In this document: in pieces, positions 4,273-43,750 of the stretch
How positions within the stretch are numbered: the first letter of the stretch is position 1
How the letters are laid out: each line of letters opens with the position of its first letter
DNA from: Macrostomum lignano
Lineage: Eukaryota
Assembly (NCBI GenBank): GCA_002269645.1
Contig: NIVC01000273.1
Location: forward strand, 1 to 64,000
Length of the DNA stretch: 64,000 bases
Direction of reading: 5' to 3'
The notes under the pieces: model-generated
Databases searched by the model: none
Told to the model about the DNA's origin: nothing
Seen by the model: only the letters and a program-made list of their open reading frames with translations
Program-made: the position numbers and the translations under genes

Positions 4273-5188
4273 ATGCAGAACTTGGGGCCGCAACTCGGAG
4301 CGATAGGAGGCTCTCTGAGCAGCACCTGCCTTTGCGTCAAAGGCCTGAGTCCCGATAGCAGCGACCTCACTATTCGGCAACTGATGACTCAGGAAGCTGG
4401 AGTTCCCGATCACGCCATCGTGTATTCTCAGGCTATTTTAGACAAAACCACCGGCCATTGTAGAGGTTTGATTCCATTATATTATGTTTATGCTATTTTA
4501 TTGTTGAATGCATTTATGTTTACTCCTAAGACCATCCGCTAAACCCTAACCGACACCAGGCCTCGGCTTCGTTGAGTTTCAAAACGAGTCGCAGGCCAAC
4601 CAGGCTTTGGAGGCGATTCAGCGGCGGCCAGTGCAGGGCGATAGACGCTTGCAAATCGGATTCGCTCTTGTGAGTGCTAGTGTCATACGTCAGCAAACAT
4701 TTTCGTAGGGAAGTCCACAAAATATGAAAGTAAAGCTTATAGTTAAATCATTTTTAATGGCTATTCAATCTAAACAGGAGAACGAGAAGGATCTTACTAG
4801 CGTGTACTTGTGGAATTTGCCGGTGTCGTGCAGCGATTATTGGATTCGACAGGTCCTTGTCAATAGCCTCATCATGAACAGAAAGATTACTCAGCCGATT
4901 AAGTCCGTCAAGGCCCTTCCAGCCAATCCAAAGTACTCAATCGGATTCATTCGCTTCGGAGAAGAGAGCGATGCAGCAGCAGCGATTGAGTTCTTTATCA
5001 GAAACGGTCTCGAGTTCAGCTATCGGTTCGGATGCTCGGACCGGCTTGCGGCTAGACTGGCAGACAAAGCAAGCCCCAGAGCAAGGCTTGATCAGATCGC
5101 TCGGCTGTCTGCCAATCAGCGAGGGTCTATGAATGATGGCCGGTCAATGAGCTTTGAGGACATCGTAAAGCCGAATCCGGTTCTCTCT
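4273..5188 (+). CDS. Copy A: tandem RRM (RBMS/alan shepard-like) RNA-binding unit, exons 4273-4465, 4560-4669, 4778-5188
   Basis: GT-AG introns 4466-4559 (phase 1) and 4670-4777 (phase 0) join CLCVKGL...QAILDKTTGHCRG|LGFVEF (RNP2/RNP1) and VYLWNLP...SIGFIRF...RLAD. Donor GTGAGT at 5189. The same intron positions occur in copies B/B'. The 3' end is unresolved (a small exon may start at 5261). Confidence 0.8.
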
Positions 5189-5534
5189 GTGAGTCAACTC
5201 GATCTGCTGAATTTTAACTACAACTATAGAACGAATCGATTTAATCCTATTGTCTGACAGGGGAAGGCTTTGCAGAGCGATTCAAAAGCAGCAAAGTGCG
5301 TACATCATTGTGCTATGTGAAACACAGAAACAATCGCTTTAAAGCCCAGACAGGAAGTTAGAAAACAGATGCTGTGTTCCCTTATCCGTCGTACCAAGTA
5401 ACGTTGCTTTGTCACTAGGATACTCGAATGTACTCGTATATGATGCATTGTGCTTTTCTTTATCAATTCACCTATATGTACTTTATTCAACTTTATTTTA
5501 CCGATTATCCGAATTTAATTACTTTTTACATCAG

Positions 5535-8093
5535 GAAATCTCTGCGGAGCCACTCCAGCTAAAGGACGCTGAGAGCCCCTTCAAGTGGAATGCTCACGAA
5601 GGCTCACTAAGAACTCCAGAGGATGTAATTCGCAAACTGTCTGAAAAACTTAAGCTGGAGCCGATGCTATCCGCAGCGTATGGAGGTCTGCTTGCTGCTT
5701 ACCATTCTGCTGCTTCTCCAAGCCGCAAACTGATTGATTTTAGCAAGGCAAGAAAGCACCTGAAGGATGCAATAGAAGCTGCCAATAGTGCCCATCAACA
5801 TCACGTTAGGTGCGACTTTGTCCTGGAGGCCATCTCTCTTCATCTGGATCAACAACAAAAGAAAACGTCTCCTGAGTTCGATGAACGCGTAAAGGCTCTG
5901 GGTCAGGCTTGGAACGTTCCAGATAATGCACAGCGAATCGAAGTCAGAGCCAATGCATTTCACGTCAAGGCACTGGCACTGTTTAACCAAGGGATAGAGA
6001 AATACGTCCAGGCAGAGGAAGCTGTTAGGACCAGCTTGAGCTTGCGACCCGACAATTTCATGTGCGTCTACCTGCTGGCGTACATTTTAGCGCGCTTGCG
6101 CAGATACCGCAAAAACAGGGCTGCTGCGGGTCCAGAAGAGCTGCTCCTGTGGAAGCGGAGCGAGGAGCTCGCTAACTTGCAGAACCTGGACGATGCGCCC
6201 AAAGAAATTCGGCTGTATTACCAGCAGTTTTTAATTAACTATTCAGAGGCACTTTTGAATAACGCTGACCTAAAGGAAAAGTGCCAAAGCTTGGCTTCTG
6301 AAACGTTCCTGGCATTAAAGAACCTGAACGCAGAAGATTTAGAATGCCACTACCGAATCGCTCTCAAATGTGAAAAAGTGTTTCGAATTCTCAAATTGCA
6401 ATTGAATGACACTCAAACCCCACGAAGCATCTTACTCAGCCTAAAAGATGTAACAAAAAACTCTCAGTTATTTTTTTCATTGGCAAAACTGATGGAAAAC
6501 GAATCTGACTATGAAGAGTATGAGAGTTTGCTCGTCCGAGCTCAGCAGGTGGCGCCCGAGCCTGGACACATTTGGGTAGACGTGTGTTTGCAGGAATACC
6601 GAGAGGAAAGACCGAATGATTTCACTCACGAGTTTATTTTGGACGAGTTTGATACGATGATAGCCAAATACAAGGATAATTTTAGAAACAAGTCTGCAAT
6701 TCAGTATGCCAAGGGAGCCTACATGTGTCGGCGGCAGCTCGTTGACAGCGGCTTTGAGTCGATGGTCGAAGCAGTTCAAGTGTGTCCTGATGTCAGAGTT
6801 TACTTTCCTCCTTGGAAAAAAGAAAAAATATTGCAAATTCTATGCGAACGGACAGAAAGACCCGAACTGGAGGCTTGGTTCAGGCTGCACATCATGAACT
6901 GGGATTTTCAATCTACACAAATTATTTGCGAACGCTTTCAGAAGGCGCTGCAAAGTGAAAACTCGGATCACCAGCTGGTATATGAGCATCTTGGTCTGTT
7001 GTACTTTCGCCTTCGAGACTTTCAAGCTGCAGAAGAAAATTTCCGAAAACTTCAGTCTGAAAATCCTCGCAGAAACTCTCTGCTGTCGTCCGCTTTGCTC
7101 AAACGTGCCGAATCAAGAGATGAAGCTGAAAAGAGAGACTTGATTGTCGAGGCTCTCCGACTTGGAAACCCGGAGGCGTGCCAGCCCGCTCGACTCTTGC
7201 TGGACAACCGACTGGATCATCAGCTGCGGTTCCCTCTAGAAGCCATCAAGCAGAAGTACTGTCCTAAAGACCCCGAGAGTGAGATGCAGATCGTGCCGTG
7301 GCTGTTCAGCAAGGACTCGTACGAGCTGCTCGCTCTGATCAGCATCGCGTCAGAGAAGAACTATGAAAACTACTCAAAAACGTCGCCTCTGGTCCAGACG
7401 GATCTGCGGAAATCGAGACTGGCTCTGGAGCGTCTAGAGCAGCGCGGGAAACAGACTGAAAGCAAGTATTATAATGCCATCATGGAAACCCTGAAACTCG
7501 CAAAAAGTGCAATGGATGGATTAACTGCAAAACTGGATGGCTACGAAATGGAAAAGAAACTTGATTACTTCCCATACGGCTTCCGGTATATGACTGTAAA
7601 AAAGGATGAGAGCAAAAAGTTGATTTGCGGATTACAGAAACAAAGCCACGAAAATCGAAGAACGGAGATAAATAAGAAACTTTCAAATTTGCTCAAGTTG
7701 AAGGCATCCGCCACTGATGAAGCGAATCAGAGAGTAAATGCGCTCGTTGATTTGCTGAGCACTCGAGAATCAAAAGCGTTTCAGTTCCAGCAGCCATTTG
7801 CTTGGCTTGTGATCTGGCAGGAGTTGAGAAACAAAGCGGAGCACTCGAGCGCACAGAAGCCCATGAAGACTTTGATTCCAGAGTTATTGGAGGCCTGGAA
7901 CTGCGACCCAGATTGTGCTGGAAGCGTCGCGCACATGGCTGCGGAGTTCGCTGAGGAGACACGACTGATATTCGAGGCCGAGACTGAGGCGCTTCGAGCA
8001 GCCACTGGTAAGACCGGAGTACCAGTAGAAGATTTGAACTCAGCCCAGTCGAGACCCACCAAGAAGTTTTTGGCTTTGCATCTTTCTGACTGA
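5535..8093 (+). CDS. Copy A: single giant exon, IFIT-like TPR protein with C-terminal HEPN-like domain (852 aa)
   Basis: Uninterrupted ORF beginning at a polypyrimidine/CAG acceptor (AG|GAA ATC). TPR motifs include YEHLGLLYFRLRDFQAAEENFRKL and AEEAVRTSLSLRPDNFMCVYLLA. RNKAEH at 7827-7844; stop at 8091-8093. Confidence 0.8.
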   Translation, partial: EISAEPLQLKDAESPFKWNAHEGSLRTPEDVIRKLSEKLKLEPMLSAAYGGLLAAYHSAASPSRKLIDFSKARKHLKDAIEAANSAHQHHVRCDFVLEAISLHLDQQQKKTSPEFDERVKALGQAWNVPDNAQRIEVRANAFHVKALALFNQGIEKYVQAEEAVRTSLSLRPDNFMCVYLLAYILARLRRYRKNRAAAGPEELLLWKRSEELANLQNLDDAPKEIRLYYQQFLINYSEALLNNADLKEKCQSLASETFLALKNLNAEDLECHYRIALKCEKVFRILKLQLNDTQTPRSILLSLKDVTKNSQLFFSLAKLMENESDYEEYESLLVRAQQVAPEPGHIWVDVCLQEYREERPNDFTHEFILDEFDTMIAKYKDNFRNKSAIQYAKGAYMCRRQLVDSGFESMVEAVQVCPDVRVYFPPWKKEKILQILCERTERPELEAWFRLHIMNWDFQSTQIICERFQKALQSENSDHQLVYEHLGLLYFRLRDFQAAEENFRKLQSENPRRNSLLSSALLKRAESRDEAEKRDLIVEALRLGNPEACQPARLLLDNRLDHQLRFPLEAIKQKYCPKDPESEMQIVPWLFSKDSYELLALISIASEKNYENYSKTSPLVQTDLRKSRLALERLEQRGKQTESKYYNAIMETLKLAKSAMDGLTAKLDGYEMEKKLDYFPYGFRYMTVKKDESKKLICGLQKQSHENRRTEINKKLSNLLKLKASATDEANQRVNALVDLLSTRESKAFQFQQPFAWLVIWQELRNKAEHSSAQKPMKTLIPELLEAWNCDPDCAGSVAHMAAEFAEETRLIFEAETEALRAATGKTGVPVEDLNSAQSRPTKKFLALHLSD

Positions 8094-8984
8094 AAGCTTT
8101 GTTTATCTATTGACCATTTCTGTGTTTTCGCTTGAGGCTTTTCTGAATTATGTACCGACAATGTTGCATGTAGTGTCCTGAACGGCGCGTTCAGACCGGA
8201 TACTGACTGGAATATGACTAACTACTGACTAAAGTTGCTGCTGCCCGAACGCTTTTTTTATTTACATGTACTCCCGTACTCAGTCTCGGCACCCGCTGTA
8301 GATTTTTAAGGGTTTTTAGCGTTGACAGTTTCGTATTTGCTTTGCTTTTTAACTTCGACCTGTTTCGTTATTTTTTCTTACCTAACAAATTATGTAATTT
8401 TCCCTTTGACCAAGAAGTGCACTGTTGTGCAGCCTTCATGTACTTTTATTAATTTTGTCTTTTGCGAGTTTAAAATCACTTTCCAATTTTTTATTAATTT
8501 GCTCATTGAAGTTACTCTTAGCAGGTCCTGGTTTCTTCTGAGTTCGAGCAACTTCTCGCTTCATTCATTTGGCCTAATATATAAGGTGTGATAAAATTCC
8601 ATTGCCGTTTTTAATTGAAGCACGCAGCCACACACAACGCTGCTGAACCAACATGGACTTTTAGCTATAAGTACGAGCTATTAGATTCCTTGATTGACTT
8701 TTGTAAGCCCTCAAAATTTTTGTACGCTTATGTTTTTCATGTACTAGGCTTTTTGGCTCTCTTTAGGCCTTTCTAAATCCCACTGATATGCCACCAAAGC
8801 TGTCCAATGGGTTACTTCGGCCATCTAAGTCAATTCACAACGTCACCACAAAGTAACAGTGCTTTGCTTTTCTTATTAAATCCAACTGTTGATACCAAGT
8901 TGTGCTACTGCTGTTAACTGTTTCTTAGAATCAGTCTGTGAATTAGTCGCTTAGTACATTTTGAAAGTATTCAACGTATATAGT

Positions 8985-9716
8985 CTGGTAGCGTCTAATG
9001 TATTATTCTGGTAGCGTTCACTATATAAGTCTGGTAGCGTCTATTGTATTATTCTGGTAGCGTCTATTGTATTATTCTGGTAGCGTCTATTGTATTATTC
9101 TGGTAGCGTCTATTGTATTATTCTTGTAGCGTCTATTGTATTATTCTTGTAGCGTCTATTGTATTATTCTTGTAGCGTCTATTGTATTATTCTAGTAGCG
9201 TCTATTGTATTATTCTGGTAGCGTCTATTGTATTATTCTGGTAGCGTCTATTGTATTATTCTTGTAGCGTTTATTGTATTATTCTTGTAGCGTCTATTGT
9301 ATTATTCTGGTTGCGTCTATTGTATTATTCTGGTAGCGTCTATTGTATTATTCTGGTAGCGTCTATTGTATTATTCTGGTTGCGTCTATTGTATTATTCT
9401 TGTAGCGTCTATTGTATTATTCTGGTTGCGTCTATTGTATTATTCTGGTTGCGTCTATTGTATTATTCTAGTAGCGTCTATTGTATTATTCTTGTAGCGT
9501 CTATTGTATTATTCTGGTAGCGTCTATTGTATTATTCTTGTAGCGTCTATTGTATTATTCTGGTAGCGTCTATTGTATTATTCTGGTAGCGTCTATTGTA
9601 TTATTCTTGTAGCGTCTATTGTATTATTCTTGTAGCGTCTATTGTATTATTCTGGTAGCGTCTATTGTATTATTCTTGTAGCGTCTATTGTATTATTCTG
9701 GTAGCGTCTATTGTAT
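8985..9716. repeat. 23-bp minisatellite, ~32 copies
   Basis: Unit GGTAGCGTCTATTGTATTATTCT with few variants (CTTGTAG, CTAGTAG, GGTTGCG) and no spacers. Confidence 0.95.
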
Positions 9717-22589: not shown

Positions 22590-23249
22590 TGTAGAAAAAC
22601 TAACGATTGAATTACTGCTGATTTTGAATTGAATAGAAAAAGGAAAAGACCAGGCTTGAGAGCCAGCCCTCCATGCAGCGTATATTATTTATAAAACTAA
22701 CGTAGGGGGTTGAGTCGAGAATAATAAAGGGAGGGGTGGAATAGATAAGAAACCAATTTGGGGGGGGGGCTAGTCGATCGATAAATGGTGGAAGAGAGAA
22801 AACGCTAACAATGTACAAACAGCTGAGAGAGAGGGAGAAAATTAAACAAGGCTAGGCGATAGAGTGAATTATTCCAAGGGCAAAATATTGTGAAACAGAA
22901 TTTCGCGACAAGGATAAAGGCAAAGCACAAAAGAAAAAAAATTTTTTAGCCAAGTATGCCAACGCTGAGTGACAGAACAAGTAAGGGCCAGAGCGACCCC
23001 AACCCCAACCACCTCACACCACGCACACTGCAGAGGGCAGAGCACAGACCATACTCGTATAGAATATAGACTGCGAATCTGCGAGACTCAAGCAGACCAG
23101 TGCTTGAAATTTACTTATTACGTCATTATATAGACTTTTAAAACCTCAGGGAGGCAAAATGAATATTTCCTTGCAAAAATATCCCGCAAAAAACTCAAAC
23201 AAGCATTCTTATCAATACAATCAGCTTCTAGCGTATCGAAAAAAAGAGA

Positions 23250-23365
23250 AGAGCAGCTGCTCAAACAAGTCCTCGTTGACGACTGGAGTATCCTTTCACT
23301 CCTTTCCGAAGGACGATGACCTGAAGCAAAAATGGATCTCAGCAATCCGTCGAGAAGGCTTTTGT
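23250..23365 (+). pseudogene. THAP zinc-finger fragment (probable DNA transposon relic)
   Basis: CSNKSSLTTGVSFHSFPKDDDLKQKWISAIRR matches the THAP core (FHxFP...W...RR); truncated before the second Cys/His. Confidence 0.7.
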
Positions 23366-24005
23366 GACGTTGCCAGTTTAAGGTGGTCCCGAAAAGGGCC
23401 GTTGGACTGCTGTTTCTCTATAGTTTCAACCCTTCAGTTTCACCGTTTCAACTAAACTTTTCAATTTGTTTATTGCGACGTTTACTCGTACTTGTAGTAG
23501 TGCCCAACGATTTTTTGGCAATTTCTAATTCACTGTATATTTTGCTATCCTCTTTCACGACCGTATAAAATTGGCACGATCAATAATTTCAATTTCTCTC
23601 GCCAGCCAATGAAAACTCTCCGTGTTTTACGCTACCCCCCTTTTGCGCTCTTTATTAACCCTCGCCTGGCGGGCTGGGGGGGTTTCTCTCGTCCCTGTTC
23701 TTGTGTTCGGTGTTTTCTCTCCTTAGGCTTGTCCTCCGTTCCGTCTGGCTTGCCTAGCCTTGTCTAGCCTTGTTTTCCTTCTCTCTGTCTGGCTGCCTCG
23801 AGCCTCCTTATCTCACGCCACGGCTGACGCCAACCTCGCCACAGCTCATCTGCCTGCCTACTGCGCCTCACTGCCTTCACTGTGCTCATTGCCATTGCTC
23901 CTCACGTTACGTCGCCATTGCATCATTCGTCTGCCACGACTTCACATTCAATTTATCTTCAAAAACCATTGTTGCAGCCGCCAGTGCCCAGAAAGCTATA
24001 GTTTG

Positions 24006-25577
24006 TGTATTGACAGTAATAACCAAGCCTAATATTGATACTACCAATAAAAACAACCGTGTGTATTTCTCGCACGTTAGCGTCTAACTTAGCGAGCTGT
24101 CTCTCTTTTAATCCAGCTCAACTTCAGCTCGCAGGCTTGCCCATAGATATAGTTCGTACTAAAAGGCATACATATCATTCCTCCTTTTCTTTAAAAAAAA
24201 TTGTTCAGTCAAAACAGTTCAGTTCAGTTAATTCGCAACAAAAAAATCCGGTTTCTTCAGTTTTGACCGGTCACGCAAAACACGTTGGTTCGGATGCTGT
24301 TTCACATCTTGGCCGTCCTTTGGCTTGATATCGAAGCTTGATGACGCGGCTAACTTTCGAGTTTTGTCTATGGCCCGCGAAGACTTGCCAGTCTGACCAT
24401 GATGCTCTAGATTTGGTCCCGTCGATTCAGCTTCCTCTTTTGCATCCTTTTTCAACTTGTAGCTATTCTTGGCATTGTGTGCTTGCGTTAGTTCTGTGTC
24501 GAAATCACACTGTGGCTGGGGCACAACTTCGGTTTCAGATTTGATCAGATGATCCACGTGTCGTTTCCAGATTTGTCCGTTGACTTCCACGTGGTAGGAC
24601 AGCGGCCCAGTCTGTTTCAACACTTTGGCTTGAGCCCACTTGTTTTCTTTTTCCATCCTGAAATCAAAAACTAGCACTATATCTCCAGCCTGAAACTCTC
24701 GGTGAGGAATATGTTCCCGGCGCATCATCTGCTTACTTTGCGAATCCAGGACTCTCCCGTATGTGTCTGGCTTCAGGAAGTCCAGCCTTGTCCGTCTTGC
24801 ATACGCAAGCATCATCTCGGCAGGTGACTTGCCCGTTGTGCTATGAGGCGTGCTTCTATAGCGGAATAGGAAATTGTGCAGGCTCAGCATGGCATCACCG
24901 TGGCTCTTCATGCCTGCTCTGATCGCATTCTTGGCTGTTTGAACCATTCGCTCACTGAGCCCGTTGGTTCTTGGATGTCCTACAGCACTGAAGATGTGAT
25001 GGATGTTATTTCGCTTGGTGAATTCAGCAAACTCCTGTGATGCAAACTGGCTTCCATTGTCGGTCAGTATCTGTCGAGGTATTCCAAACCGAGCAAATGT
25101 CTCTCGAAAGCGTTGAATGGTGTTCGCGGCACTGGCAACTTTCATTGGAAAAACCTCTACCCATTTTGATGTGGCATCTACGATTACCAACCAATTGAAT
25201 CCGAAACACGGTCCGAAAAAATCTGCCTGAAGTCTCGTCCATGGCTTTTCTGGCCAACTCAACGGGTGAACAGCAGATTCTGGTGGTTTGCTTCGCTGCA
25301 GTTCGCATCCCTTGCATTGTTTCACAGCTCTTTCAATCTGTTGGTCGATTCCCGGAAACCAAACGTGCAGGCGAGCGATCGATTTCATCGATACAATCCC
25401 AGGGTGTCCTTCGTGCAGCAGGTCCAAAACTTGGTGTTGGAGGCTAGATGGAATGATGGCGCGTATACCCCAGAAGATGACTCCCTGCTCAAGACAGAGT
25501 TCGTTTCCTTTCTGACGGTATATCTCAAGCTCAAATTCACATTTCTCCGGCCAACCGTTCTGGCAGAACCTGATTAC
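24006..25577 (-). mobile_element. 5'-truncated Gypsy/Ty3 LTR retrotransposon (integrase, PPT, short 3' LTR)
   Basis: PPT AAAGAAAAGGAGGAA followed by TGATATG... (LTR ~24177-24006 ending ...CAATACA); pol is truncated at 25577 exactly where the B' duplication begins. Confidence 0.8.
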
Positions 25578-25607
25578 CTGCGGGGACAGACAGCATCGGC
25601 AGAGCAT
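24228..25607 (-). CDS. Gypsy (Mag/K02A2.6-like) integrase ORF, 459 aa; the first 10 codons come from the duplicated segment
   Basis: HHCC finger LHEGHPG...CKGC; catalytic ADFFGP, TDNGSQF, NGLSER; no internal stops. Confidence 0.88.
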   Translation of the reverse strand: MLCRCCLSPQVIRFCQNGWPEKCEFELEIYRQKGNELCLEQGVIFWGIRAIIPSSLQHQVLDLLHEGHPGIVSMKSIARLHVWFPGIDQQIERAVKQCKGCELQRSKPPESAVHPLSWPEKPWTRLQADFFGPCFGFNWLVIVDATSKWVEVFPMKVASAANTIQRFRETFARFGIPRQILTDNGSQFASQEFAEFTKRNNIHHIFSAVGHPRTNGLSERMVQTAKNAIRAGMKSHGDAMLSLHNFLFRYRSTPHSTTGKSPAEMMLAYARRTRLDFLKPDTYGRVLDSQSKQMMRREHIPHREFQAGDIVLVFDFRMEKENKWAQAKVLKQTGPLSYHVEVNGQIWKRHVDHLIKSETEVVPQPQCDFDTELTQAHNAKNSYKLKKDAKEEAESTGPNLEHHGQTGKSSRAIDKTRKLAASSSFDIKPKDGQDVKQHPNQRVLRDRSKLKKPDFFVAN

Positions 25608-25699
25608 TCAGTTCGGCAGCTTTATAATTTTTGATAGCTTGTGCAGGACAGGAGGTGTCGTCTGTGCAGTGTTGGGCAACTTCAATTGGTGCTTTGGCC

Positions 25700-28192
25700 T
25701 CACTTAGTGGTTGCTTTTTGAAGCTCCTCAGTCTCGGCCTCGAATATCAGTCGTGTCTCCTCAGCGAACTCCGCAGCCATGTGCGCAACGCTTCCAGCAC
25801 AATTTGGGTCGCAGTTCCAGGCCTCCAATAACTCTGGAATCAAAGTCTTCATGGGCTTCTGTCCGCTCGAGTGCTCCGCTTTGTTTCTCAACTCCTGCCA
25901 GATCACAAGCCAAGCAAATGGCTGCTGGAACTGAAACGCTTTTGATTCTCGAGTGCTCAGCAAATCAACGAGCGCATTTACTCTCTGATTCGCTTCGTCA
26001 GTGGCGGATGCCTTCAACTTGAGCAAATTTGAAAGTTTCTTATTAATCTCCGTTCTTCGATTTTCGTGGCTTTGTTTCTGTAATCCGCAAATCAACTTTT
26101 TGCTCTCATCCTTTTTTACAGTCATATACCGGAAGCCGTATGGGAAATAATCAAGCTTCTTTTCCATTTCGGAGCCATCCAGTTTTGCAGTTAATCCATC
26201 CATTGCACTTTTTGCGAGTTTCAGGGTTTCCATGATGGCATTATAATACTCGCTTTCAGTCTGTTTCCCGTCCTGCTCTAGTCGCTCCAGAGCCAGTCTC
26301 GATTTCCGCAGATCCGTCTGGACCAGAGGCGACGTTTTTGAGTAGTTTTCATAGTTCTTCTCTGACGCGATGCTGATCAGAGCGAGCAGCTCGTACGAGT
26401 CCTTGCTGAACAGCCACGGCACGATCTGCATCTCACTCTCGGGGTCTTCAGGACAGTACTTCTGCTTGATGGCTTCTAGAGGGAACCGCCGCTGATGATC
26501 CAGTCGATTGTCCAGCAAGTGTTGAGCGGGCTGGCACGCCTCCGGGTTTCCAAGTCGGAGAGCCTCGATAATCAAGTCTCTCTTTTCAGCCCCATCTCTC
26601 GATTCGGCTCTTTTGAGCAAAGCGGACGACAGCAGAGAGTTTCTGCGAGGATTTTCAGACTGAAGTTTTCGGAAATTTTCTTCTGCAGCTTTGAAGTCTT
26701 GAAGGCGAAGGTATAACAGACCAAGATGCTCGTACACCAGCTGGTGATCCGAGTTTTCACTATTCAATGCTTCGGTATAGAGCTGAACAATTCTCTGTGG
26801 TTCATCTGACTGCAAGTCAAGGTCCAGCATATGCTGCTGAAACCAAGCCTCGAATTCGCATCTGTCAGTCTTCTGGCTCAGATTTTTTAGCGTCTCATCT
26901 TTTTTCGATTTATGGATATGAAGTCGAACCTCAGGATAGACCTGCACCGCTTTGACCATTTCTTCAAAACCATCAGCAACGCTCTCTGTTTCAGAAAAGG
27001 TCATCATAAAGGCTCCCTTCGAGTATAGACAAACGGCTTCGTACCTGGGATAATCCTGATGATATCTTTCAGCGAGAGTGTCATACTCATTCAAAATATC
27101 GACGGCCGAAAACTTGTCGCTTCTTTTTTGTTTGAAGTTTTGATAATAAATATCAACCCAAATGTGTCCAGGCTCATAGGACAACTCTTGGGCTTTTATC
27201 AGCAGCTCTTCGCACCTTTCATCTTCTTTTTTCTCTTCAGCCAACATCGCTAATCTGAAAAGCAGATCAGAATTTTTAGTACCCTTCTCTAGGCGTTGCA
27301 ATATTTCCTGGAGTTCCTGCGTTTCTGGATGCTTGCGAATCTGAAAGATTTTTTCACACCTGAAGACAATTCGGTAATGTTCATCCAATACCTGAGTACT
27401 TATGTTTCTCAATGCTTGGTACGTGGCATTCGCGAGTTCCAGGCACTTGTCTTCTAAGCTCCGGTTGTTCAAAATAGCCTCCGCATAGTTTATTAAAAAC
27501 TGATAGAAGTACATTTTTGTTCCTTCATTCTTATACTGCCACCGGTGTTCATTTGCCAGATCATATGCACGATTCCACAGGAACAACTCCTCTGCATCAG
27601 CAGGCGTTCTGTTGTTGTGATGGCGACGCATCCGCGCACGAATATACGCCAGCAGGTAGATGCACATGAAGTTATCCGGTCGCAAGCTCAGACTTGCTTT
27701 CACAGCTTTCTCTGCTTCATCGTACTTTTTTATACCTTGGTGAAAAAAGTCCAGAGCTTTAACGTGAAAAACGTTGGCTCTGATCTCGATGCGCTTGGCC
27801 TCATCTTGAGTGTTCCAGATCTTGTTGAGGGCCTTGACGCGTTCAGTGAAGTTGAGTTGGTTCCGGCTCTGCTTAGCATCCAGGTTTAACTCAATGGCTT
27901 GCAAGACGAATTCGCATCTGACATGACCTTCATCTGCGTCTTTGCCATAGTCTACTGCGCTCTTCAAGTATTCCCTTGACTTTCTGAAGTCGATATGCTT
28001 ACGCCGATCGAATCTGGTTCCGTGATAAGCAGCCAGGAGGCCTTGATAAGCCGATGAGAGCATTGGCTCAAGTTTCAGTCGGTCCAAAATTGTGTCGATC
28101 ACATCCTCTATATTTTTGTCGGAGCCATCGTATGCGCACCATTTGAATGGGTTTTCGGCGTCTTTCAGTTCGAGTGGTTCCTTTGTGATTTC
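25700..28192 (-). CDS. Copy B': intact IFIT-like TPR-HEPN giant exon (830 aa)
   Basis: Acceptor AG|GAA ATC ACA at 28192; open to the TGA at 25700-25702; RNKAEH at 25871-25888. Confidence 0.82.
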   Translation of the reverse strand, partial: EITKEPLELKDAENPFKWCAYDGSDKNIEDVIDTILDRLKLEPMLSSAYQGLLAAYHGTRFDRRKHIDFRKSREYLKSAVDYGKDADEGHVRCEFVLQAIELNLDAKQSRNQLNFTERVKALNKIWNTQDEAKRIEIRANVFHVKALDFFHQGIKKYDEAEKAVKASLSLRPDNFMCIYLLAYIRARMRRHHNNRTPADAEELFLWNRAYDLANEHRWQYKNEGTKMYFYQFLINYAEAILNNRSLEDKCLELANATYQALRNISTQVLDEHYRIVFRCEKIFQIRKHPETQELQEILQRLEKGTKNSDLLFRLAMLAEEKKEDERCEELLIKAQELSYEPGHIWVDIYYQNFKQKRSDKFSAVDILNEYDTLAERYHQDYPRYEAVCLYSKGAFMMTFSETESVADGFEEMVKAVQVYPEVRLHIHKSKKDETLKNLSQKTDRCEFEAWFQQHMLDLDLQSDEPQRIVQLYTEALNSENSDHQLVYEHLGLLYLRLQDFKAAEENFRKLQSENPRRNSLLSSALLKRAESRDGAEKRDLIIEALRLGNPEACQPAQHLLDNRLDHQRRFPLEAIKQKYCPEDPESEMQIVPWLFSKDSYELLALISIASEKNYENYSKTSPLVQTDLRKSRLALERLEQDGKQTESEYYNAIMETLKLAKSAMDGLTAKLDGSEMEKKLDYFPYGFRYMTVKKDESKKLICGLQKQSHENRRTEINKKLSNLLKLKASATDEANQRVNALVDLLSTRESKAFQFQQPFAWLVIWQELRNKAEHSSGQKPMKTLIPELLEAWNCDPNCAGSVAHMAAEFAEETRLIFEAETEELQKATTK

Positions 28193-28803
28193 CTGAAATC
28201 AATTATTGGACAGTCAGTTAAGGTTTTGATTAATTATCCTTTTGAGAAATTCTCTTTAAGTAGAGTATGCTGTCTAATAGTAGGAGAAAGACGAATCGCT
28301 CCGGCCCTTTTAGCGTGACTTTAACAATATACATAGCAATAGTAATATGCTATAGTCTTCTCAATTGTCATATCAATGCATTAACGAGCTACTACTCAGC
28401 ATTATTCCCCTCAGTGCCACTCTGCATCATTCTCCTACTGTATTAACCTTCAGACTTTGCAAGTATCGAATGAGATAAGCGATAAGGATTCAAAGAACCA
28501 CAGCAGCATCTCAGCTGACAGCAGCTGCAAGTTGCATTAACATGTACTCGTATTTTGTAAGCTTGGTCAGTTCGTACTATTAGTATGAGGCTATATTAGA
28601 GCATTTATATCTTAATACGAGCTATCTAGCGCATATCACTAGTCTGGTGTAGGGTAAAACCGAGGCTTGCTTGACTTAGCCTGCAGAATAGGTTTGATGC
28701 AATCAAAAGGCTAAACGGTGTCCTTTTAGACTCGCTTTACTTAGGCAGCTACCCACCTCCAACCCTAATTACAATTGGGTAGTACAGCCATGAGGAAACT
28801 TAC

Positions 28804-30697
28804 AAGAAGATGCGCGCTCGGCTTCACAATATCTTCAAGGCAGACTGGTCGACCACCGACATCACGGGTCTTTTTTTCAGATTTTTTTTCTGAAAATTTA
28901 GCAGCAAGCCGCCCAGAGCATCCATATTTGTGGGAGAGCCTTAGCCCATTGTGATTGATGAGTTGGATAACACATGAAGCACTGTCCTCTGTTGTAAATT
29001 TCACAATGCCTGTTGAATAATATGGGTTAGCACGAAAAATCCTGAATGACAAGATCGTATCCTCGCAACAATTGCATTCGTATAGTAGAAACTGTCTAAT
29101 CCACTCTATCGTGCAGTTGACAGGCAAATTCCATACGAACATCTCTTTGCCGTCCTTTTCTGCCTCCTGTATTTTGTACACGGTGGGTGCTCGGCATTGC
29201 ATTTGAAATGCTGCGCTATCAGAAAGTTATGTCTAAAAAATATCGAAGACTCACCCGAGCGAATTCGACCTTCAATTTTTCCTGGCTGGCATGTTTCGTG
29301 TCTTGCAGCTGCTGAATATTTCTTACTGCCATCTTTGCCCGCTCTGTGTTTCGAAGTTCAGCGAAGCCGATCCCTAAATGTGAGTGAAAGTTCTCGTTCA
29401 CTTTTCTTGCTCTTCGACTACAGTTTCTTTGTTCTGAAGCCTTAATTTTTTTGGTTTGAAAGTGAGTACTAGTAGTTCACTATCATACGAGTATTATTTA
29501 TCATGATCTATTATAGTAGTTAGGTAGGTACTCACAATTAAATATTTTAAATTTGCATCGCTAATTTAGGGGTTGTAGACTAGTGGTCGACTGAAAGGTC
29601 GGGGCTTCGATTTTCTACTCACTTGGAACAATTTGTGTCCTTGAGCAAGACACTTGACTATGCATTGTTTCAGTTCACCCAGCTGTAAAATGGGTGCCAG
29701 CATTAGCTGGGGTAATTGAGGGTGCGTGGCGAGGTATCCAGTCAATCCGGCGACAGGACGATCCGGCGACAGCCAAAACAGCGACAGTCAATCCGGTGAC
29801 AATTCGTAGTAAAACCCTATTACATGTAAACCGGCTATTGTTACTTAAACAGATTAGAGAGAGCTCTGATTTTTATAATTATTACAATTGCTATTATTGT
29901 TATTAGTTATTATTATTTGATTTTTAATAGAATGTATGCAGGAATAGCTCCGATAATTGGAATTTAGCGGGTTCAAAATGCGCGGATTTCTGTCAACTAT
30001 TAACATATTGTTTTCTTATAATGATGATACATGTACATTTACATGTATTGCTTTAAAAATGGGAAACTGCATTAAATCATTTATTTTCACTAGGCCGCAC
30101 ACTAGTTTTTCATCTGCAGTTTGATGTGACACGGCCTAAACTGTCAGAAGTACGGACATAATGTACCATTTTTATTAGAAAATATACTGGTCGTCTAAAG
30201 TGAATTATTTACATGTAAAATTAAAATAGAGTTCATGTAAAGTTTTATTTGTATCTAAAATCCGTAAAATCTACTATACAAAATCTGTCGCCGATTTGAC
30301 TGTCGTCGGATCGTCTGGAAGCCCGTGGCGACCCCCCCCCCCTCAGTCCTTGGACTGAAAAACTGCTCAATAGCTGCGGCTATAAATTATACGAGTATAT
30401 ACGTCGCATATTATTACAATCGCAAACTAATGCACTTGGCATACTTTGCATGATAAAACAGACTACATAAGAAATTGAAATCGCACCTTTACACTGGCCA
30501 GATTGCGAATCCAAGATGGCTTGAGCAAACACTATGGAGTGATCAGGAACTCCGGCTTCGTGCGCAATGAGCTGCCGAATTTTCAGATCTGTTGTGCCGG
30601 GAGACAAACCCCGGATGAAGATTCGGGTGCTGGACATGCGACTGTTGCTGTTGGAGTCACTGGCGGGCGCACTGGCGGCGGACGATGAAGCTTGCAT
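28804..30697 (-). CDS. Copy B': tandem RRM unit, exons 30697-30487, 29373-29255, 29166-28804
   Basis: Same exons as copy B at offset 13978/13979. Confidence 0.8.
29568..30364 (+). mobile_element. CORE-SINE with nested MITE (29733-30323), duplicate of 15590-16385
   Basis: Same TSD CGTGGCGA and TIRs as in copy B. Confidence 0.7.
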
Positions 30698-33600
30698 CCT
30701 GAAGCTGTGTTGAGGAACACCTTAACTCTTGGAAGGATGTAGAGTAGAGCGAGCTTGTGTGCTTTGGGTTTGGGGTTAGCTCTACTCATAAGGCCCAGTC
30801 AAGGAGTTCTTAATTTAGCAAGTTTCAAATGGACACTCACGGGGGGGAAGAAACCGATAACAAATATGGCCGCTTGAAAAAGGCTCCTTTGCTTCCCATC
30901 CCTCAGTTCCGCCTTCCCTGCCGAGGCCCGCCTCCATCTCTGGGCCTGCCCAACTCTCCAAAATGTACAGGGGAAACCTAGACCCTAAGAGTTAAATGGG
31001 CTAGTTAGTACGAATTGAGGAACGGAGGAACCGAAAGCAAGCTGGTGTACGTCTCTGGTGTACAACCCCCGTGACCACAGCACTGGCCGTATTTATTGGG
31101 AAAGGGTTTCATTGGGGATTCACTATACTATAGGCCCATAGTGCATCAATGTAAACTCACTTGACTTATCACTGAACTTCTTGGCCAGGGAATACTTTAA
31201 ATATGTATGTAACTCTCCCCACTGCGGTCGGGGCAACCCTGCAACCCACGCCGAGTCACTCCCAAGAGCCAGCCAATTCCTTACTTAGCCCCAGGCCGAG
31301 AATTTATCCATATCCAAGTTTTGAAGCTTTAAAGGCGTCGTTTTACAAGGTCGAAATTTCATAAGGAGGAAAACTACTTCATCGTTCTTGTCAAATACAT
31401 TTTCGTACTGTCCTTGTGAAATTTGACCTTATGAAGTCCCTTTGCTAGAGTTTTCGATGTTGTGAAATTTCGACCTTATGAAGGAATGTGCTTTCGACGT
31501 TGTGAAACTTCGAGTTTGTGAAACCCCTCCAATTCAAATACTAGTGGACCCAAAATCAGGCAACAAAATTTACAATTAAAATAGCTAATTTGACAGAAAT
31601 ATATCGCATCCCACATACCGTAAAGATACTCTGTGATGGAGACGAATAGAAGTAAATTGCATGCAACACAGTAAATAAAAGGCTTCAAGATACTTCGAGG
31701 AGTTATTTAAACAGGATTTAATGAAATTATTTAAAATTTTATTTTCATTTACCTATAAGGTTTTAACGTAAGCTTGAAGGATTCAAATTGGCTGGCTTGC
31801 GAACACTTGCAGTCGTTTTATTTCGATCTGAGATGTGGACTTGCGCTTGCCAACGAGCAATGGCCGATTAGTCGTAATTAGCAAAGTGGCGTTCTTCTAA
31901 TAAATGAGTTCTAAGTTCCAATAGAAGATAAGGGAAAGAAAGAAGACATGAGCGTGCATGAATAACGGCCGAGAGAGCAGACACATGTGTACAGATTTTA
32001 CATTATACGACGACTTTTTAGGCCAGCGATATTTACCTTTCTATTCATTTTATGGCAACGCATGCTCTTCGCACTGTCACTGTCCTTTCTGTGCCTAATC
32101 TTTTCTGAAGAGTGAACACTAGACATTTTCATAAGTATTCTGGTCAAACCGAGTTTTACTCAGTTGGTCCCATAGATCTTATATTCCTATCATAGATCTG
32201 TTAAAAGGTAAAGGTGTACGAGACGTCGTATGGTTTTGGTTGGTCCTCAGTTTAAAGTCGAATTGAATTCTCCGTAGCTCTGTCAAAAAATCTTTTGACT
32301 CCGTATTTTGTTACCACTTGTGTTGGCGGTAAGGCGTTAAAACTGTGGGATGAGCTGGCTTGGGGTTGGTGTATTAGGAGGCGGGCTTCGGTGTTATGAA
32401 TTTTATGAAGTGTCGGTCTTGTGAAGGATCATGCAGTAGTTTTCGACGCTGTTAAATTTCGGTCTTGTGAAGGCAGGTGTCTTTCGGAGTTATAAACTTT
32501 GGTCTTATGAAATTGACCCTTTATTCCTGTCTCATTTTGTGACCCTAAGATGTCTTGTCTTCTCAGATTTTTTCTTTCGCTTTTCTTTATCTGACTGATA
32601 ATTGTTTCGCAACCATAAATTCGCTTGCAAGTGGCACTGAAAGCTAGCTTGTTTATTGTTCTTACGTGTATATTCTATAAGGACTGATTCAAGTGCCTGT
32701 GGGTTAACGCTCCACCAAGCTCAGTGAGCAAAAAATACGAGCGTAATTTCTTCCCGTGAATACAATGTGCCAGACCTGCTGAGTGAGTACCGCGATGAAA
32801 AAGCTGCTGTGCCAATATCAGACGGCTTAGACGATGCTACAGGTGGGAAACTCTGGTGCTCGACCTCGACGGGGTGCTGCTCTTCCCACCAATGATGACG
32901 GCTTTCGGTTGTCGGAGAGTCGGCTTAGCATGGTTGGCTGCGTCGAAAAGCTCTGCGCAGAAGACCTCTGTGCTCTGCGTTGCAGACGACATCAAAACTG
33001 ATATCATCTGCCGAGGCGCTGAGTTCAGCAGTTCTTCTACCTTGGCTGCCTGTTTCAGGGCCGTCGGTGGAAATCTGCGGCGTCGCCGCGGGCTTGCCTG
33101 GGCTCGCTTTCTTAAAGCGACGCCAATCCTGCAGTTCGAGACAGAGAGCGACGTTTGGTCAGGCGGTGGTCGAGGCCATGCTGTTTTAAACGTCGAAACC
33201 TGGACGCTGACGGGCTCGTTCGAACAGCATCTTGAAGGCACACGCACCGCCTATAGTATGCTCCTGTTATACTAGAACGTGCATACGAATAGCATTAGCA
33301 GTAGAACTACAATCCCCCTAACAATTGTTTTTGCTGCGCCGGAACGGAGCAACGTCGGCACACAAAATTCAAGAACACGGAGTAACTTCTTGTTCCGCAC
33401 TTTCTCAAACAAGAATAAATACTCGATACAGATATTCGACGATTCTGCCAAAAGGTCGGATTTTTTCATAAGTGCCAGTGTATTCAGTACACCCCTGCGT
33501 GCGCAAATCAGCACTGCGCCTCAGTGCAGCCTTGCCAAGCCTCCAAAATTCGTTTGCACATCGATCACATGTGTCTGCATCAGCTCTGACTTCGTTGATC

Positions 33601-42700: not shown

Positions 42701-43750
42701 TTGCGATATTGGAGAGCGTACAATGAGTATATAAAGTAAAATTCATAGGAATCTTTTTTTTAATGCTGTGCTTTTAATTTTTCGAACCTAAGCAAAGAAA
42801 TTATATTCCCGAACTCAGCGTTTCAAGCTCTTTCTAGCAATACAAGGCTCTCTTCTGAAAGTAAAAAACTCGAAGCACAAACAACGATTGAACATTCCTG
42901 CTATAAAGCATTCAAATTCATAAGGTGTACATTCAGCGCCAGCTACAGTGAGAGGCCTGCAAGTTGATGCATTGAAATTAACAACCAAGCCAGCCCATGA
43001 ATAATTGAATAGCGACACCCGCCCCTCAATTAAAATGTGTTGCGCAACCTTTCAACGCTTGTAGCTGTCCACGCGAGTGTAGAGAACCAATGCTAAAGTT
43101 GGCACTGAGTTATGATGCAATACAATTCCATCGTCAGTCAGACTGCTTCTCAATCGGAAAGAACTGTTTGAACTTTAAAAAACAGGGAGAAAATCAAGTT
43201 TTTCGAATATTTAAGCCCGAAAAAATGAAGCAATTTCTTAGCAAAATTTTGTGTACCAGCGCACCATCAATACGCATCGAATGCAGAAAACCCCACGAAA
43301 TTCCGACCATGTAGAGTTAAGTTAAGCGAAGGTTCCTATAGGTACATAGTTTTGATTTTTAGTATATTGGAAGCATCCAGAATTTTTATTATACCCCCCC
43401 CCTTAATTGGTTACGCAAGTTAAATAGAGTAATTATCTGGGCAGTGGGGCAAAGTGAATTTTCTTATCAGTTGGCTCTGGCGCAATCATTAAAATTGGCT
43501 GTGAAGTTTCTCGCTGCGCGCAGGCTGATAAAAAAATACACTAAAAAGGCCATTTAAAACAGTTTTTCGAATATTTAATCCCCTTAGCATTGAGCTAGAG
43601 CTTAATAAAATTACATGTACCGTCCCGGGCACATTTGACATCTTTTGGCGAAGAAACGGAGAAAATCGGTTGAGCCTTTTGGGAGATAACCTGTTACATA
43701 CCCACAGACAGACAGGGCCGGTGGAGGGGGGGTTGCTACTTTAGATATAT
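39796..43750 (-). mobile_element. Two older Helitron-like units (39796-41152, 41153-43750) filled with AAAGAATCCCC and AAGCCTTGACATCTCAG subrepeats
   Basis: Both left ends read CTAGCCAATTCCAAC(C/T)CCGTTGGGG, i.e. a minus-strand hairpin plus CTAG. Segment 42760-42900 is homologous to the internal conserved block of the downstream units. Confidence 0.5.

What the first reader, a model, noticed from the sequence alone, without database searches (positions are those of the whole stretch)
4273..30697. Candidate undescribed RNA-sensing nuclease system: three tandem-RRM + IFIT-like TPR-HEPN modules
Seen in sequence: three copies of the same two-part module, namely spliced tandem RRM exons followed within 0.35-0.6 kb by one giant exon with TPR repeats and a C-terminal RNKAEH motif. 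The RRM part and the TPR part are always duplicated together, despite deep divergence between A and B. Established: RRMs bind ssRNA, IFIT TPR scaffolds bind viral RNA 5' ends, and HEPN RNxxxH domains are RNases in many defence systems (Cas13, RNase L/Ire1 KEN, bacterial Abi/toxins). Inference: an invertebrate innate-immune sensor-effector that recognises foreign RNA and cleaves RNA. The paralogue expansion, sensor diversification and TE-rich setting resemble immune gene clusters.
Basis: partly seen in the sequence, partly recalled or inferred. Interest (0 to 1): 0.9.

Follow-up and report, generated by a model that had tools for sequence, protein, structure and literature searches.

The report
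Flatworm IFIT-like RNA-binding gene cluster
Three copies of a Macrostomum lignano (flatworm) gene encode one long protein each, made of two RNA-binding RRM domains, a repeat domain related to the vertebrate antiviral IFIT proteins, and a conserved tail of unknown fold; the proposed HEPN nuclease in that tail is not supported.

Summary
Three copies lie at 4273-8093 (+, A), 11723-16718 (-, B) and 25700-30697 (-, B'). The "two-part module" is one four-exon gene per copy, giving proteins of 1090 aa (A) and 1061 aa (B'). The organism is the flatworm Macrostomum lignano, and public models already fuse the parts as uncharacterised "RRM domain-containing protein".

B and B' differ at only 4 positions inside the gene. 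One is a 1-bp deletion in a G run that truncates B.

Supported:
- Two N-terminal RRMs.
- A ~560-aa all-helical TPR domain homologous to vertebrate IFITs. The family profile hits human IFIT5 first in the PDB (E 1.9e-7), a paralogue carries IFIT5's exact LECHFTW, and Foldseek gives IFIT5/IFIT1 the best target-normalised TM-scores (0.50-0.58).

Not supported: the HEPN RNase.
- The Arg of RNKAEH occurs only in the A/B clade. Relatives have V or D there, while N and H are invariant.
- No HEPN profile matches.
- The C-terminal model is unusable (pLDDT 41).

A ~1-kb gene-conversion tract (97% versus ~60% DNA identity) homogenises the C-terminal part between A and B'.

Best reading: an IFIT-lineage RNA-binding protein family with RRM or RGG add-ons and an orphan C-terminal domain. 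An immune role is plausible but untested.

The parts
4273..4465 (+). Gene A exon 1: start codon and first half of RRM1 (RNP2 LCVKGL)
   Evidence: The splice junction reproduces UniProt/NCBI models P0002-P0004 exactly. Pfam RRM_1 on the spliced N-terminus gives E 1.1e-10.
4560..4669 (+). Gene A exon 2: second half of RRM1 (RNP1 RGLGFVEF)
4778..5188 (+). Gene A exon 3: degenerate RRM2 plus linker
   Evidence: A second RRM_1 stretch is reported.
5535..8093 (+). Gene A exon 4 (giant exon, 852 aa plus stop): IFIT-like TPR domain (about 5535-7229) and C-terminal domain (about 7230-8093)
7827..7844 (+). RNKAEH hexapeptide in A (R1003-H1008 of the 1090-aa protein)
6954..7990 (+). Gene-conversion tract in A. 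It is 97% identical in DNA to B' 26761-25725, while the rest of the exon is about 60% identical. It covers the last TPRs and the C-terminal domain.
   Evidence: Sliding identity and the list of differences: 31 differences in 1037 bp.
11723..14214 (-). Gene B exon 4, with a 1-bp deletion in a G run at 12463/12464 that causes a frameshift and a stop at codon 836
14826..15188 (-). Gene B exon 3 (RRM2 plus linker)
   Evidence: GT/AG sites checked
15277..15395 (-). Gene B exon 2 (RRM1 second half)
16508..16718 (-). Gene B exon 1 (start codon, RRM1 first half)
26513..28192 (-). Gene B' exon 4, IFIT-like TPR domain (exon residues 1-560). The N-terminal motif AENPFKW is a degenerate form of IFIT's ECHFTW.
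   Evidence: AF2 pLDDT is about 80-95 over residues 21-550. Foldseek finds IFIT5/IFIT1. The family profile matches IFIT5.
25700..26512 (-). Gene B' exon 4, C-terminal domain of about 270 aa with unknown fold, plus the stop codon. Residues invariant across the family: R-E, W-x3-W, N-x3-H, A-H-x-A-x-E-F-x-E.
   Evidence: Alignments. No family, PDB or HEPN match. AF2 pLDDT below 50.
25871..25888 (-). RNKAEH hexapeptide in B' (R1000-H1005 of the 1061-aa protein). The B copy has it at 11894-11911.
28804..29166 (-). Gene B' exon 3 (degenerate RRM2 plus linker)
29255..29373 (-). Gene B' exon 2 (RRM1 second half, RNP1 KGIGFAEL spans the exon 1/2 junction)
30487..30697 (-). Gene B' exon 1 (start codon, RRM1 first half, RNP2 IFIRGL)
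   Evidence: It is 100% identical to P0005.

Best explanation
The window carries three paralogous copies of one Macrostomum lignano gene: A, and the near-identical pair B/B'. Each copy encodes a protein of about 1060-1090 aa with three parts:
1. Two N-terminal RRMs. RRM1 is near-canonical and RRM2 is degenerate.
2. A TPR solenoid of about 560 aa that is a remote homologue of vertebrate IFIT proteins.
3. A helical C-terminal domain of about 270 aa that is specific to this small family.

Shown here: the gene structure, the domain composition, the IFIT relationship, the restriction of the family to M. lignano plus two unidentified ENA assemblies, and gene conversion of the 3' kilobase between A and B'.

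Inferred: the protein is an RNA-binding factor in which the RRMs (RGG repeats in paralogues) add single-strand RNA affinity to an IFIT-type TPR scaffold. Like IFITs, it would act by binding or sequestering RNA, or by recruiting partners, rather than by a demonstrated nuclease activity. The conserved C-terminal domain would be the constant output or assembly module, and the N-terminal two thirds would diversify. A role against RNA viruses or retroelements is the most likely biological context, by analogy with IFITs and with the duplication and conversion dynamics. It is untested.
For: Gene models:
- GT-AG in-frame junctions reproduce public fused models.

RRMs:
- Pfam RRM_1 gives E 1e-10 and 7e-8 with two stretches each.
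- PDB hits include nucleolin, RBMS1, Sxl and Hu RRMs.

IFIT homology:
- Profile A3 versus the PDB has IFIT5 as top hit at E 5.4e-6.
- The richer profile A6 gives E 1.9e-7 and 33 bits, aligned from residue 13 of IFIT5 through TPR1-4.
- LECHFTW in P0006, LECHFNW in P0018 and LECHLNW in L003 match IFIT5's LECHFTW.
- The AF2 model is confident over the TPR part, with 10-residue block mean pLDDT 68-95 (mostly >=80) over residues 21-550.
- Foldseek gives IFIT5/IFIT1 TMt of about 0.46-0.58 over about 520-590 alignment columns, the best among all TPR hits.
- The IFIT5 RNA-contact residues Y156 and R186 are conserved.

Link to RNA binding:
- Paralogues P0006 and P0011 replace the RRMs with C-terminal RGG repeats, an independent association with RNA-binding modules.

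Family range:
- Only 10 hits at E<1e-3 appeared in 1.84 billion representative proteins. The real relatives are from M. lignano or two unnamed ENA assemblies.

Gene conversion:
- Identity is 97% over A 6954-7990 against about 60% elsewhere.
- This recalls the recurrent gene conversion reported for mammalian IFIT1/IFIT1B (PMC4887208, cited within PMC11789081).
Against: - The IFIT relationship is remote. It scores about 30 bits, driven largely by the N-terminal motif. Only IFIT5 passed in the PDB sequence search, not IFIT1, IFIT2 or IFIT3.
- The A/B proteins in the window have a degenerate motif (AENPFKW).
- Three of five mapped IFIT5 5'-ppp pocket residues are replaced: T37 to V, Q41 to I/L/T, and K150 to H/N/C. 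IFIT-type 5'-end recognition may not be kept.
- There is no expression, induction or binding data.
- The many invariant polar residues in the C-terminal domain (R-E, N, H, H, E, E) look more like an active or ligand-binding site than a pure scaffold. A catalytic output is therefore not excluded.
Confidence: 0.5

Rival explanations
1. One reading: a sensor-effector protein. The RRMs and IFIT-like TPRs recognise foreign RNA, and the C-terminal domain is a HEPN-fold, metal-independent RNase that uses R-N-x3-H to cleave RNA, comparable to RNase L or Cas13.
For: - RNKAEH fits Rx4H with the typical polar N after the R (HEPN definition in PMC3710099).
- It lies at the C-terminal end of a predicted helix followed by a loop in both AF2 runs. 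That is where the HEPN motif sits, at the end of helix 3.
- N and H are invariant in all 12 family sequences.
- The hexapeptide resembles IRE1's RNKKHH.
- HEPN-TPR fusions exist in animals (DZIP3 family, Table 1 of PMC3710099).
- P0024 and P0025 have R-x6-H (IRKDNEFKH).
- The domain is rich in invariant charged residues.
Against: - The Arg is not conserved. It is V in P0006, P0011 and P0019 and D in the ENA relatives.
- The E-x3-[KR] of helix 2 is present only in the paralogues that lack the Arg.
- No HEPN model matches at E<=10 in Pfam, PADLOC or NCBIfam, and there is no PDB profile hit.
- hhalign against the IRE1 KEN domain gives 0.7% probability.
- RN...H is expected about 0.07-0.09 times per protein by chance.
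- The fold was not testable: pLDDT 41 and best Foldseek E 0.39.
Confidence: 0.15
2. A lineage-specific housekeeping or germline post-transcriptional regulator, such as an mRNP or granule component, with no role in defence. The TPR domain would serve as a protein-protein scaffold. The similarity to IFIT would reflect shared ancestry without a shared function.
For: - RRM plus RGG plus TPR is a common make-up for mRNP proteins.
- The IFIT 5'-ppp pocket residues are mostly not kept.
- There is no interferon system in flatworms (general knowledge).
- By my recollection, not checked here, the M. lignano genome is highly repetitive and partly duplicated, so TEs and duplicates around a gene say little. 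This window holds at least three retroelement fragments.
Against: - The family is narrow and fast-evolving. A and B share only 37-58% identity in the RRM and TPR parts.
- It has variable accessory domains, tandem copies in two organisms, and gene conversion. These fit conflict-type genes better than core housekeeping genes.
- None of this is decisive.
Confidence: 0.3
3. The TPR domain is a generic TPR array, and the IFIT resemblance is convergent or due to chance. The locus would then be only an uncharacterised RRM-TPR gene duplicated in a repeat-rich region.
For: - Only one TPR passes Pfam thresholds.
- Single sequences (the B' ORF, P0018) do not hit IFIT in the PDB.
- Foldseek E-values for Ctr9 and Ski3 are as good as those for IFIT5.
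Against: - The exact heptapeptide LECHFTW at the same N-terminal position is expected about 2.5e-3 times in the whole PDB sequence set by composition (my calculation).
- The profile hit improves when more family members are added, from 5.4e-6 to 1.9e-7.
- The alignment is collinear from the N-terminus over about 170 residues.
- IFITs give two to four times higher target-normalised TM-scores than any other TPR protein.
Confidence: 0.05

Closest known systems
Vertebrate IFIT proteins (IFIT5, IFIT1; PDB 3ZGQ/4HOQ, 5UDI/6C6K)
   Same: - An all-TPR protein of similar length in the matching part, about 480-560 aa.
- The N-terminal signature L-E-C-H-F-T-W is exact in paralogue P0006.
- It is the top PDB profile hit, with a collinear alignment.
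- It gives the best global fold match.
- Y156 and R186 equivalents are conserved.
- The genes occur as tandem paralogues subject to gene conversion.
   Different: - Found in a flatworm, whereas IFITs are reported only from jawed vertebrates (PMC3688568).
- Fused to two N-terminal RRMs (or to C-terminal RGG repeats in paralogues).
- Carries an extra 270-aa C-terminal domain.
- The 5'-ppp contacts T37, Q41 and K150 are replaced.
- No interferon system exists to induce it.
- Sequence identity is about 12-15%.
RNase L / IRE1 (repeat or sensor domain plus KEN-type HEPN RNase)
   Same: The hexapeptide RNKAEH resembles IRE1's RNKKHH.
   Different: - There is no detectable profile similarity (hhalign 0.7%).
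- There is no kinase or pseudokinase domain.
- The Arg is not conserved in the family.
- The fold is unknown.
DZIP3/hRUL138-type HEPN proteins of animals (HEPN fused to TPR, RING, Death, NACHT; lineage-specific expansions)
   Same: A TPR plus putative-HEPN combination, with lineage-specific expansion in an invertebrate (PMC3710099 Table 1).
   Different: No Pfam HEPN model, including HEPN_DZIP3 if it is in this Pfam copy, matched at E<=10. The TPRs here are of IFIT type, and the putative HEPN is C-terminal.
RRM-helical-repeat RNA-binding pairs such as SLIRP-LRPPRC
   Same: An RRM is combined with a long alpha-solenoid for RNA handling (PMC5001613, seen).
   Different: Those are two separate proteins with PPR repeats, not TPRs, and they act in mitochondria. 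No homology is claimed.

Membership tests
[quoted passage not shown] | N-terminal signature helix with L-x-C-H-F-T-W | tested here: met
   P0006 has LECHFTW, identical to IFIT5 residues 16-22. P0018 has LECHFNW and L003 has LECHLNW. The window genes A and B' have the degenerate AE[SN]PFKW, keeping E, F and W. That the motif is general to vertebrate IFITs is from my memory; only IFIT5 was seen in tool output.
[quoted passage not shown] | Significant sequence-profile similarity to IFITs above other TPR proteins | tested here: met
   IFIT5 is the top PDB hit at E 5.4e-6 (A3) and 1.9e-7 (A6). The next hits are a designed consensus TPR at 3e-5 and Cdc27 at 1.3e-4. Caveat: IFIT1, IFIT2 and IFIT3 chains were not reported.
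[quoted passage not shown] | Overall IFIT fold (TPR subdomains forming a clamp) | tested here: met
   Foldseek TMt is 0.50-0.58 for IFIT5 and about 0.46-0.53 for IFIT1 over about 520-590 alignment columns. Other TPR proteins give 0.13-0.43. The model's 10-residue block mean pLDDT is 68-95 (mostly >=80) over residues 21-550. RMSD of 8-10 A means similar topology, not a tight superposition.
[quoted passage not shown] | Conserved 5'-ppp/cap RNA pocket residues (IFIT5 E33, T37, Q41, K150, Y156, R186, Y250, R253...) | tested here: not met
   Of the residues that can be mapped by the profile alignment, T37 becomes V, Q41 becomes I/L/T and K150 becomes H/N/C. Y156 stays Y and R186 stays R. Residues beyond 186 could not be mapped.
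[quoted passage not shown] | Induction by interferon or virus; antiviral activity | not testable with these tools
   No expression data were found for these genes.
HEPN superfamily RNases | R-x4-6-H motif conserved across the family, with a polar residue after the R | tested here: not met
   R occurs only in the A/B clade. It is V in P0006, P0011 and P0019 and D in L001, P0023, P0024 and P0025. N and H are invariant. P0024 and P0025 have an alternative R-x6-H.
HEPN superfamily RNases | [quoted passage not shown] | tested here: inconclusive
   The AF2 model of the domain has pLDDT 41 and pTM 0.28. Foldseek's best hit is E 0.39 with no HEPN. The predicted secondary structure does put RNKAEH at the end of a helix before a loop in both runs.
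HEPN superfamily RNases | Match to a curated HEPN profile or to a solved HEPN protein | tested here: not met
   There were no HEPN hits at E<=10 in Pfam, PADLOC, NCBIfam or PDB profiles (37, 72). hhalign against the IRE1 KEN domain gives 0.7%.
HEPN superfamily RNases | Metal-independent RNase activity dependent on R and H | not testable with these tools
   This needs biochemistry.
RRM (RNA recognition motif) proteins | Pfam RRM_1 match with RNP2 and RNP1 motifs | tested here: met
   RRM_1 gives 41.7 bits for A and 32.7 bits for B' against a cut-off of 20.7, with two stretches each. RNP2 is LCVKGL or IFIRGL, and RNP1 is RGLGFVEF or KGIGFAEL. RRM2 is degenerate and matches weakly on its own. PDB RRM hits reach E 6e-13.

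The most novel reading that the evidence does not exclude
IFITs are not a jawed-vertebrate invention. Under this reading, a flatworm lineage keeps bona fide IFIT homologues that have been built into sensor-effector proteins. RRM or RGG modules plus the IFIT clamp select RNA. The orphan C-terminal domain, with its invariant R-E, N-x3-H and H-x3-E-F-x-E residues, is a previously undescribed RNA-cleaving or RNA-modifying enzyme, either a highly derived HEPN or a new fold. It would be kept uniform between paralogues by gene conversion while the sensor parts diversify.
Probability: 0.15. Interest if true: 0.85.

Novelty: new variant of a known kind. Interest (0 to 1): 0.58.

Why it matters
IFIT genes are described as arising with interferon in jawed vertebrates (PMC3688568). 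A flatworm family carrying the IFIT signature motif and fold would push the origin of the IFIT scaffold back to early bilaterians, or reveal an unexpected transfer. This would parallel recent findings for Mx (PMC11789081).

The fusions to RRMs or RGG repeats tie this scaffold to RNA independently of any vertebrate data. The conserved orphan C-terminal domain is a concrete candidate for a new effector or assembly module.

Macrostomum lignano is amenable to transgenesis (PMC5173321 abstract) and, to my knowledge, to RNAi, so binding, cleavage and infection phenotypes can be tested directly. If the C-terminal domain proves to be inert, this is simply an uncharacterised lineage-specific RNA-binding gene family.

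Tried and rejected
1. Pfam, PADLOC, NCBIfam and PDB profile searches of the C-terminal domain, as a single sequence and as alignments A4 and A5. Only chance-level hits appeared: PhaP, Baculo_FP, MOLO1, and Csm2 at E 0.2.
2. AF2 on the C-terminal 266 aa with a 5-sequence alignment gave pLDDT 41. The Foldseek result is meaningless, with a best E of 0.39 to GPCRs and dynein.
3. hhalign of the C-terminal profile against the human IRE1 KEN domain (sequence verified) gave 0.7% probability. I could not assemble alignments of other HEPN families with these tools.
4. The second and third word-indexed homology searches with alignments returned only close relatives of the first sequence. The third did yield new ENA members, P0020-P0025.
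5. The exhaustive HMMER hit P0007 (C. bovis, 5020 aa, 17 stretches) is an E/K/P/T-rich repeat protein, so the match is compositional. I rejected it. P0010, P0012 and P0013 are generic TPR hits.
6. Literature searches found nothing describing these genes or invertebrate IFITs. I searched for the Mlig gene identifiers, Macrostomum plus IFIT, IFIT-like annotations in invertebrates, and the ENA accessions.
7. I considered a two-gene operon-like 'module' and rejected it, because the parts are spliced into one ORF.
8. I considered TE richness as evidence for immunity and rejected it as non-specific.
9. I could not identify the organisms behind ENA assemblies ERZ25074608 and ERZ26859043.


Full report
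**What is there**

ORF listing shows three large ORFs with the same C-terminal sequence, each preceded by short RRM-like ORFs. They lie at 5409-8093 (+), at 12400-14124 plus 11723-12454 (-), and at 25700-28102 (-). A word-indexed search of 5.8 billion proteins returned only five hits. All are from the flatworm Macrostomum lignano and all are named "RRM domain-containing protein" or "hypothetical protein".

Those public models join the RRM part to the TPR part. I mapped them back with tBLASTn and searched GT/AG pairs that reproduce the protein sequence. This gave exact four-exon models:
- Gene A: 4273-4465, 4560-4669, 4778-5188, 5535-8093 (+), 1090 aa.
- Gene B': 30697-30487, 29373-29255, 29166-28804, 28192-25700 (-), 1061 aa.
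- Gene B has the same structure at 16718-16508, 15395-15277, 15188-14826 and 14214-11723, with canonical splice sites.

The giant exon has no in-frame ATG before codon 44. The "two-part module" is therefore one gene, and co-duplication of its parts needs no explanation.

**How independent are the copies?**

B (11601-16802) and B' (25578-30774) are 99.67% identical over 5.2 kb. Inside the gene they differ at four positions. One is a 1-bp deletion in a GGGG run (12463/12464 versus 26441). It shifts the frame and gives a stop at codon 836. B is therefore a very recent duplicate that is either just pseudogenised or carries a homopolymer error. A falsely duplicated haplotype cannot be excluded.

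A and B' are deeply diverged over the RRMs and most of the TPR region, with 37-58% protein identity and about 60% DNA identity. Identity jumps to 97% from A 6954 to 7990, matching B' 26761-25725, with 31 differences in 1037 bp. It falls again just before the stop. Synonymous sites are equally uniform, so this is a gene-conversion or recombination tract. It covers the last TPRs and the whole C-terminal domain.

**Domains**

The spliced N-termini hit Pfam RRM_1 above threshold with two stretches each. They also hit RRMs of nucleolin, RBMS1, Sex-lethal and Hu proteins in the PDB. RRM1 has near-canonical RNP2 and RNP1 motifs, and RRM2 is degenerate.

In the giant exon only one TPR passes Pfam thresholds. 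AF2, run with a six-sequence family alignment, models exon residues 1-560 as a confident all-helical repeat solenoid, with block pLDDT mostly 80-95. Residues 563-830 are below 50.

**The IFIT relationship**

- A profile of the family (A3) searched against all PDB sequences gives human IFIT5 as top hit (E 5.4e-6). The alignment is collinear from the N-terminus of both proteins through about 170 residues.
- Adding more diverse members (A6) improves this to E 1.9e-7 and 33 bits.
- The M. lignano paralogue P0006 carries LECHFTW, identical to IFIT5 residues 16-22. Relatives have LECHFNW or LECHLNW. The window genes have the degenerate AENPFKW or AESPFKW.
- By amino-acid composition, that heptapeptide is expected about 2.5e-3 times in the whole PDB sequence set (my calculation).
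- Foldseek of the 830-aa model against the PDB gives IFIT5 (4HOQ, 3ZGQ, 4HOR, 4J0U, 4HOT) and IFIT1 (6C6K, 5W5I, 5UDK) target-normalised TM-scores of about 0.46-0.58 over about 520-590 alignment columns. Other long TPR proteins with similar E-values (Ctr9, Ski3, Naa15) reach only 0.13-0.25.

I conclude that the TPR domain is a remote IFIT homologue, with probability about 0.75. The caveats are as follows:
- Single sequences do not reach IFIT.
- Only IFIT5 was reported by the sequence search.
- Of the IFIT5 RNA-pocket residues that can be mapped (list from PMC9677429), T37, Q41 and K150 are replaced, while Y156 and R186 are kept.

A survey of IFIT evolution found IFITs only in jawed vertebrates (PMC3688568). 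I found no paper describing invertebrate or Macrostomum IFITs.

**The family**

An exhaustive HMMER search of 1.84 billion representative proteins with the A/B' profile found ten hits at E<1e-3. The real relatives are further M. lignano genes: P0006 (Mlig030191g2), P0009/P0019, and P0011 (Mlig019237g1). There are also unnamed proteins from ENA assemblies.

Fetching those contigs showed tandem, intronless IFIT-like plus C-terminal-domain genes in ERZ25074608 (L001). Further members occur in ERZ26859043 (L002, L003). None has RRMs nearby, and GC content is 36-38%. The host organisms are unknown.

P0006 and P0011 lack RRMs but end in long RGG/RG repeats. The core of the family is therefore the IFIT-like TPR domain plus the C-terminal domain. 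Different RNA-binding modules were added in different members.

**The HEPN claim**

HEPN domains are four-helix bundles with R-x4-6-H at the end of helix 3 (PMC3710099). RNKAEH fits the pattern, and in both AF2 runs it sits at the end of a predicted helix before a loop. The rest of the evidence is against the claim or fails to support it:
- In alignments of 12 family sequences the residue before the invariant Asn is Arg only in the A/B clade. It is Val in three M. lignano paralogues and Asp in the ENA relatives. Asn and His are invariant.
- The E-x3-[KR] that many HEPNs have in helix 2 is seen only in paralogues that lack the Arg.
- No HEPN model or solved HEPN protein matches at E<=10.
- hhalign against the IRE1 KEN domain, whose motif RNKKHH was verified, gives 0.7%.
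- RN...H is expected 0.07-0.09 times per protein by chance.
- The domain-only AF2 model has pLDDT 41, and its Foldseek matches are noise.

The defining sequence feature was therefore tested and not met at family level, and the fold remains untested. The domain does have a striking set of invariant polar residues: R-E about 20 residues upstream, W-x3-W, N-x3-H and A-H-x-A-x-E-F-x-E. A catalytic or ligand-binding role, HEPN-derived or not, stays open at about 15%.

**Context**

The neighbourhood holds several retroelement pieces:
- A Pao/BEL-type LTR element with 98%-identical LTRs at 17143-17465 and 22590-22910, and internal ORFs at 17959-22023.
- A Ty3-type integrase ORF abutting the 3' end of B' (24228-25607).
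- A reverse-transcriptase ORF (36821-38140).

This is ordinary for a repeat-rich genome and is not evidence for an immune cluster.

**Verdict**

The most likely mechanism is RNA binding by RRMs plus an IFIT-type scaffold, with an orphan conserved C-terminal module whose function is unknown. I rate this a new variant of a known kind. It is of moderate to high interest, mainly because it suggests IFIT-type proteins outside vertebrates and offers a tractable new domain to test.

Noticed in passing
window 17143-17465 and 22590-22910; ORFs 17959-22023 (-): Two direct repeats, 98% identical and 5.4 kb apart, flank ORFs with Pao retrotransposon peptidase, integrase zinc-binding and Ty3-peptidase domains. 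This is a young BEL/Pao-type LTR retrotransposon about 340-430 bp upstream of gene B, and its coding region is split into several ORFs.
   Followed up: partly
window 24228-25607 (-): A 459-aa ORF with integrase core and H2C2 zinc-binding domains (Ty3/gypsy-like) begins about 90 bp beyond the stop codon of B'. It marks the left edge of the B/B' duplicated segment.
   Followed up: partly
window 36821-38140 (+): A 439-aa ORF with a reverse-transcriptase (RVT_1) domain, another retroelement fragment.
   Followed up: no
window 8976-9716: A 23-bp minisatellite (GTATTATTCTGGTAGCGTCTATT), 32 copies with 94% matches, lies in the AT-rich spacer between the convergent genes A and B.
   Followed up: no
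window 39877-57145: C-rich degenerate satellite arrays with periods of 16, 27-31, 110-111 and 171 nt produce a GC skew down to -0.57. The long ORFs there (for example 55514-56704) translate to Ser/Leu-rich low-complexity sequence and are probably not genes.
   Followed up: partly
window 62466-62865: A 57-bp tandem repeat, 7 copies with 93% matches, overlaps ORFs 62375-62988.
   Followed up: no
L001 7695-8510 and 8517-9338 (ENA ERZ25074608): In an unidentified organism's homologue the C-terminal domain is duplicated in tandem and in frame, with nearly identical copies. The whole IFIT-like gene is also present twice in tandem (L001 782-3721 and 6001-9395). It is unknown whether the duplication is real or an assembly artefact.
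   Followed up: partly
proteins P0006 and P0011 (M. lignano Mlig030191g2, Mlig019237g1): Paralogues of the family lack RRMs but carry long C-terminal RGG/RG-rich repeats (GRGGSEHFRGRGG..., GGAGGRGRGGSHF...). This is a second, independent fusion of the IFIT-like core to an RNA-binding module.
   Followed up: partly
protein P0016 (UniProt A0A1I8JIK7, 4203 aa, 'AMP deaminase'): It sits in the same 90% cluster as P0006. It is probably a merged gene model that joins an IFIT-like gene to a neighbouring AMP deaminase gene.
   Followed up: no
protein P0019 residues ~385-445: This paralogue model contains a long hydrophobic stretch (GVSLAVFHPGIISAMAVLAVAVAIV...) inside the TPR region, and a PQAVSDA repeat before the C-terminal domain. 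These could be a retained intron or mis-annotation, or a real membrane-anchored variant.
   Followed up: no
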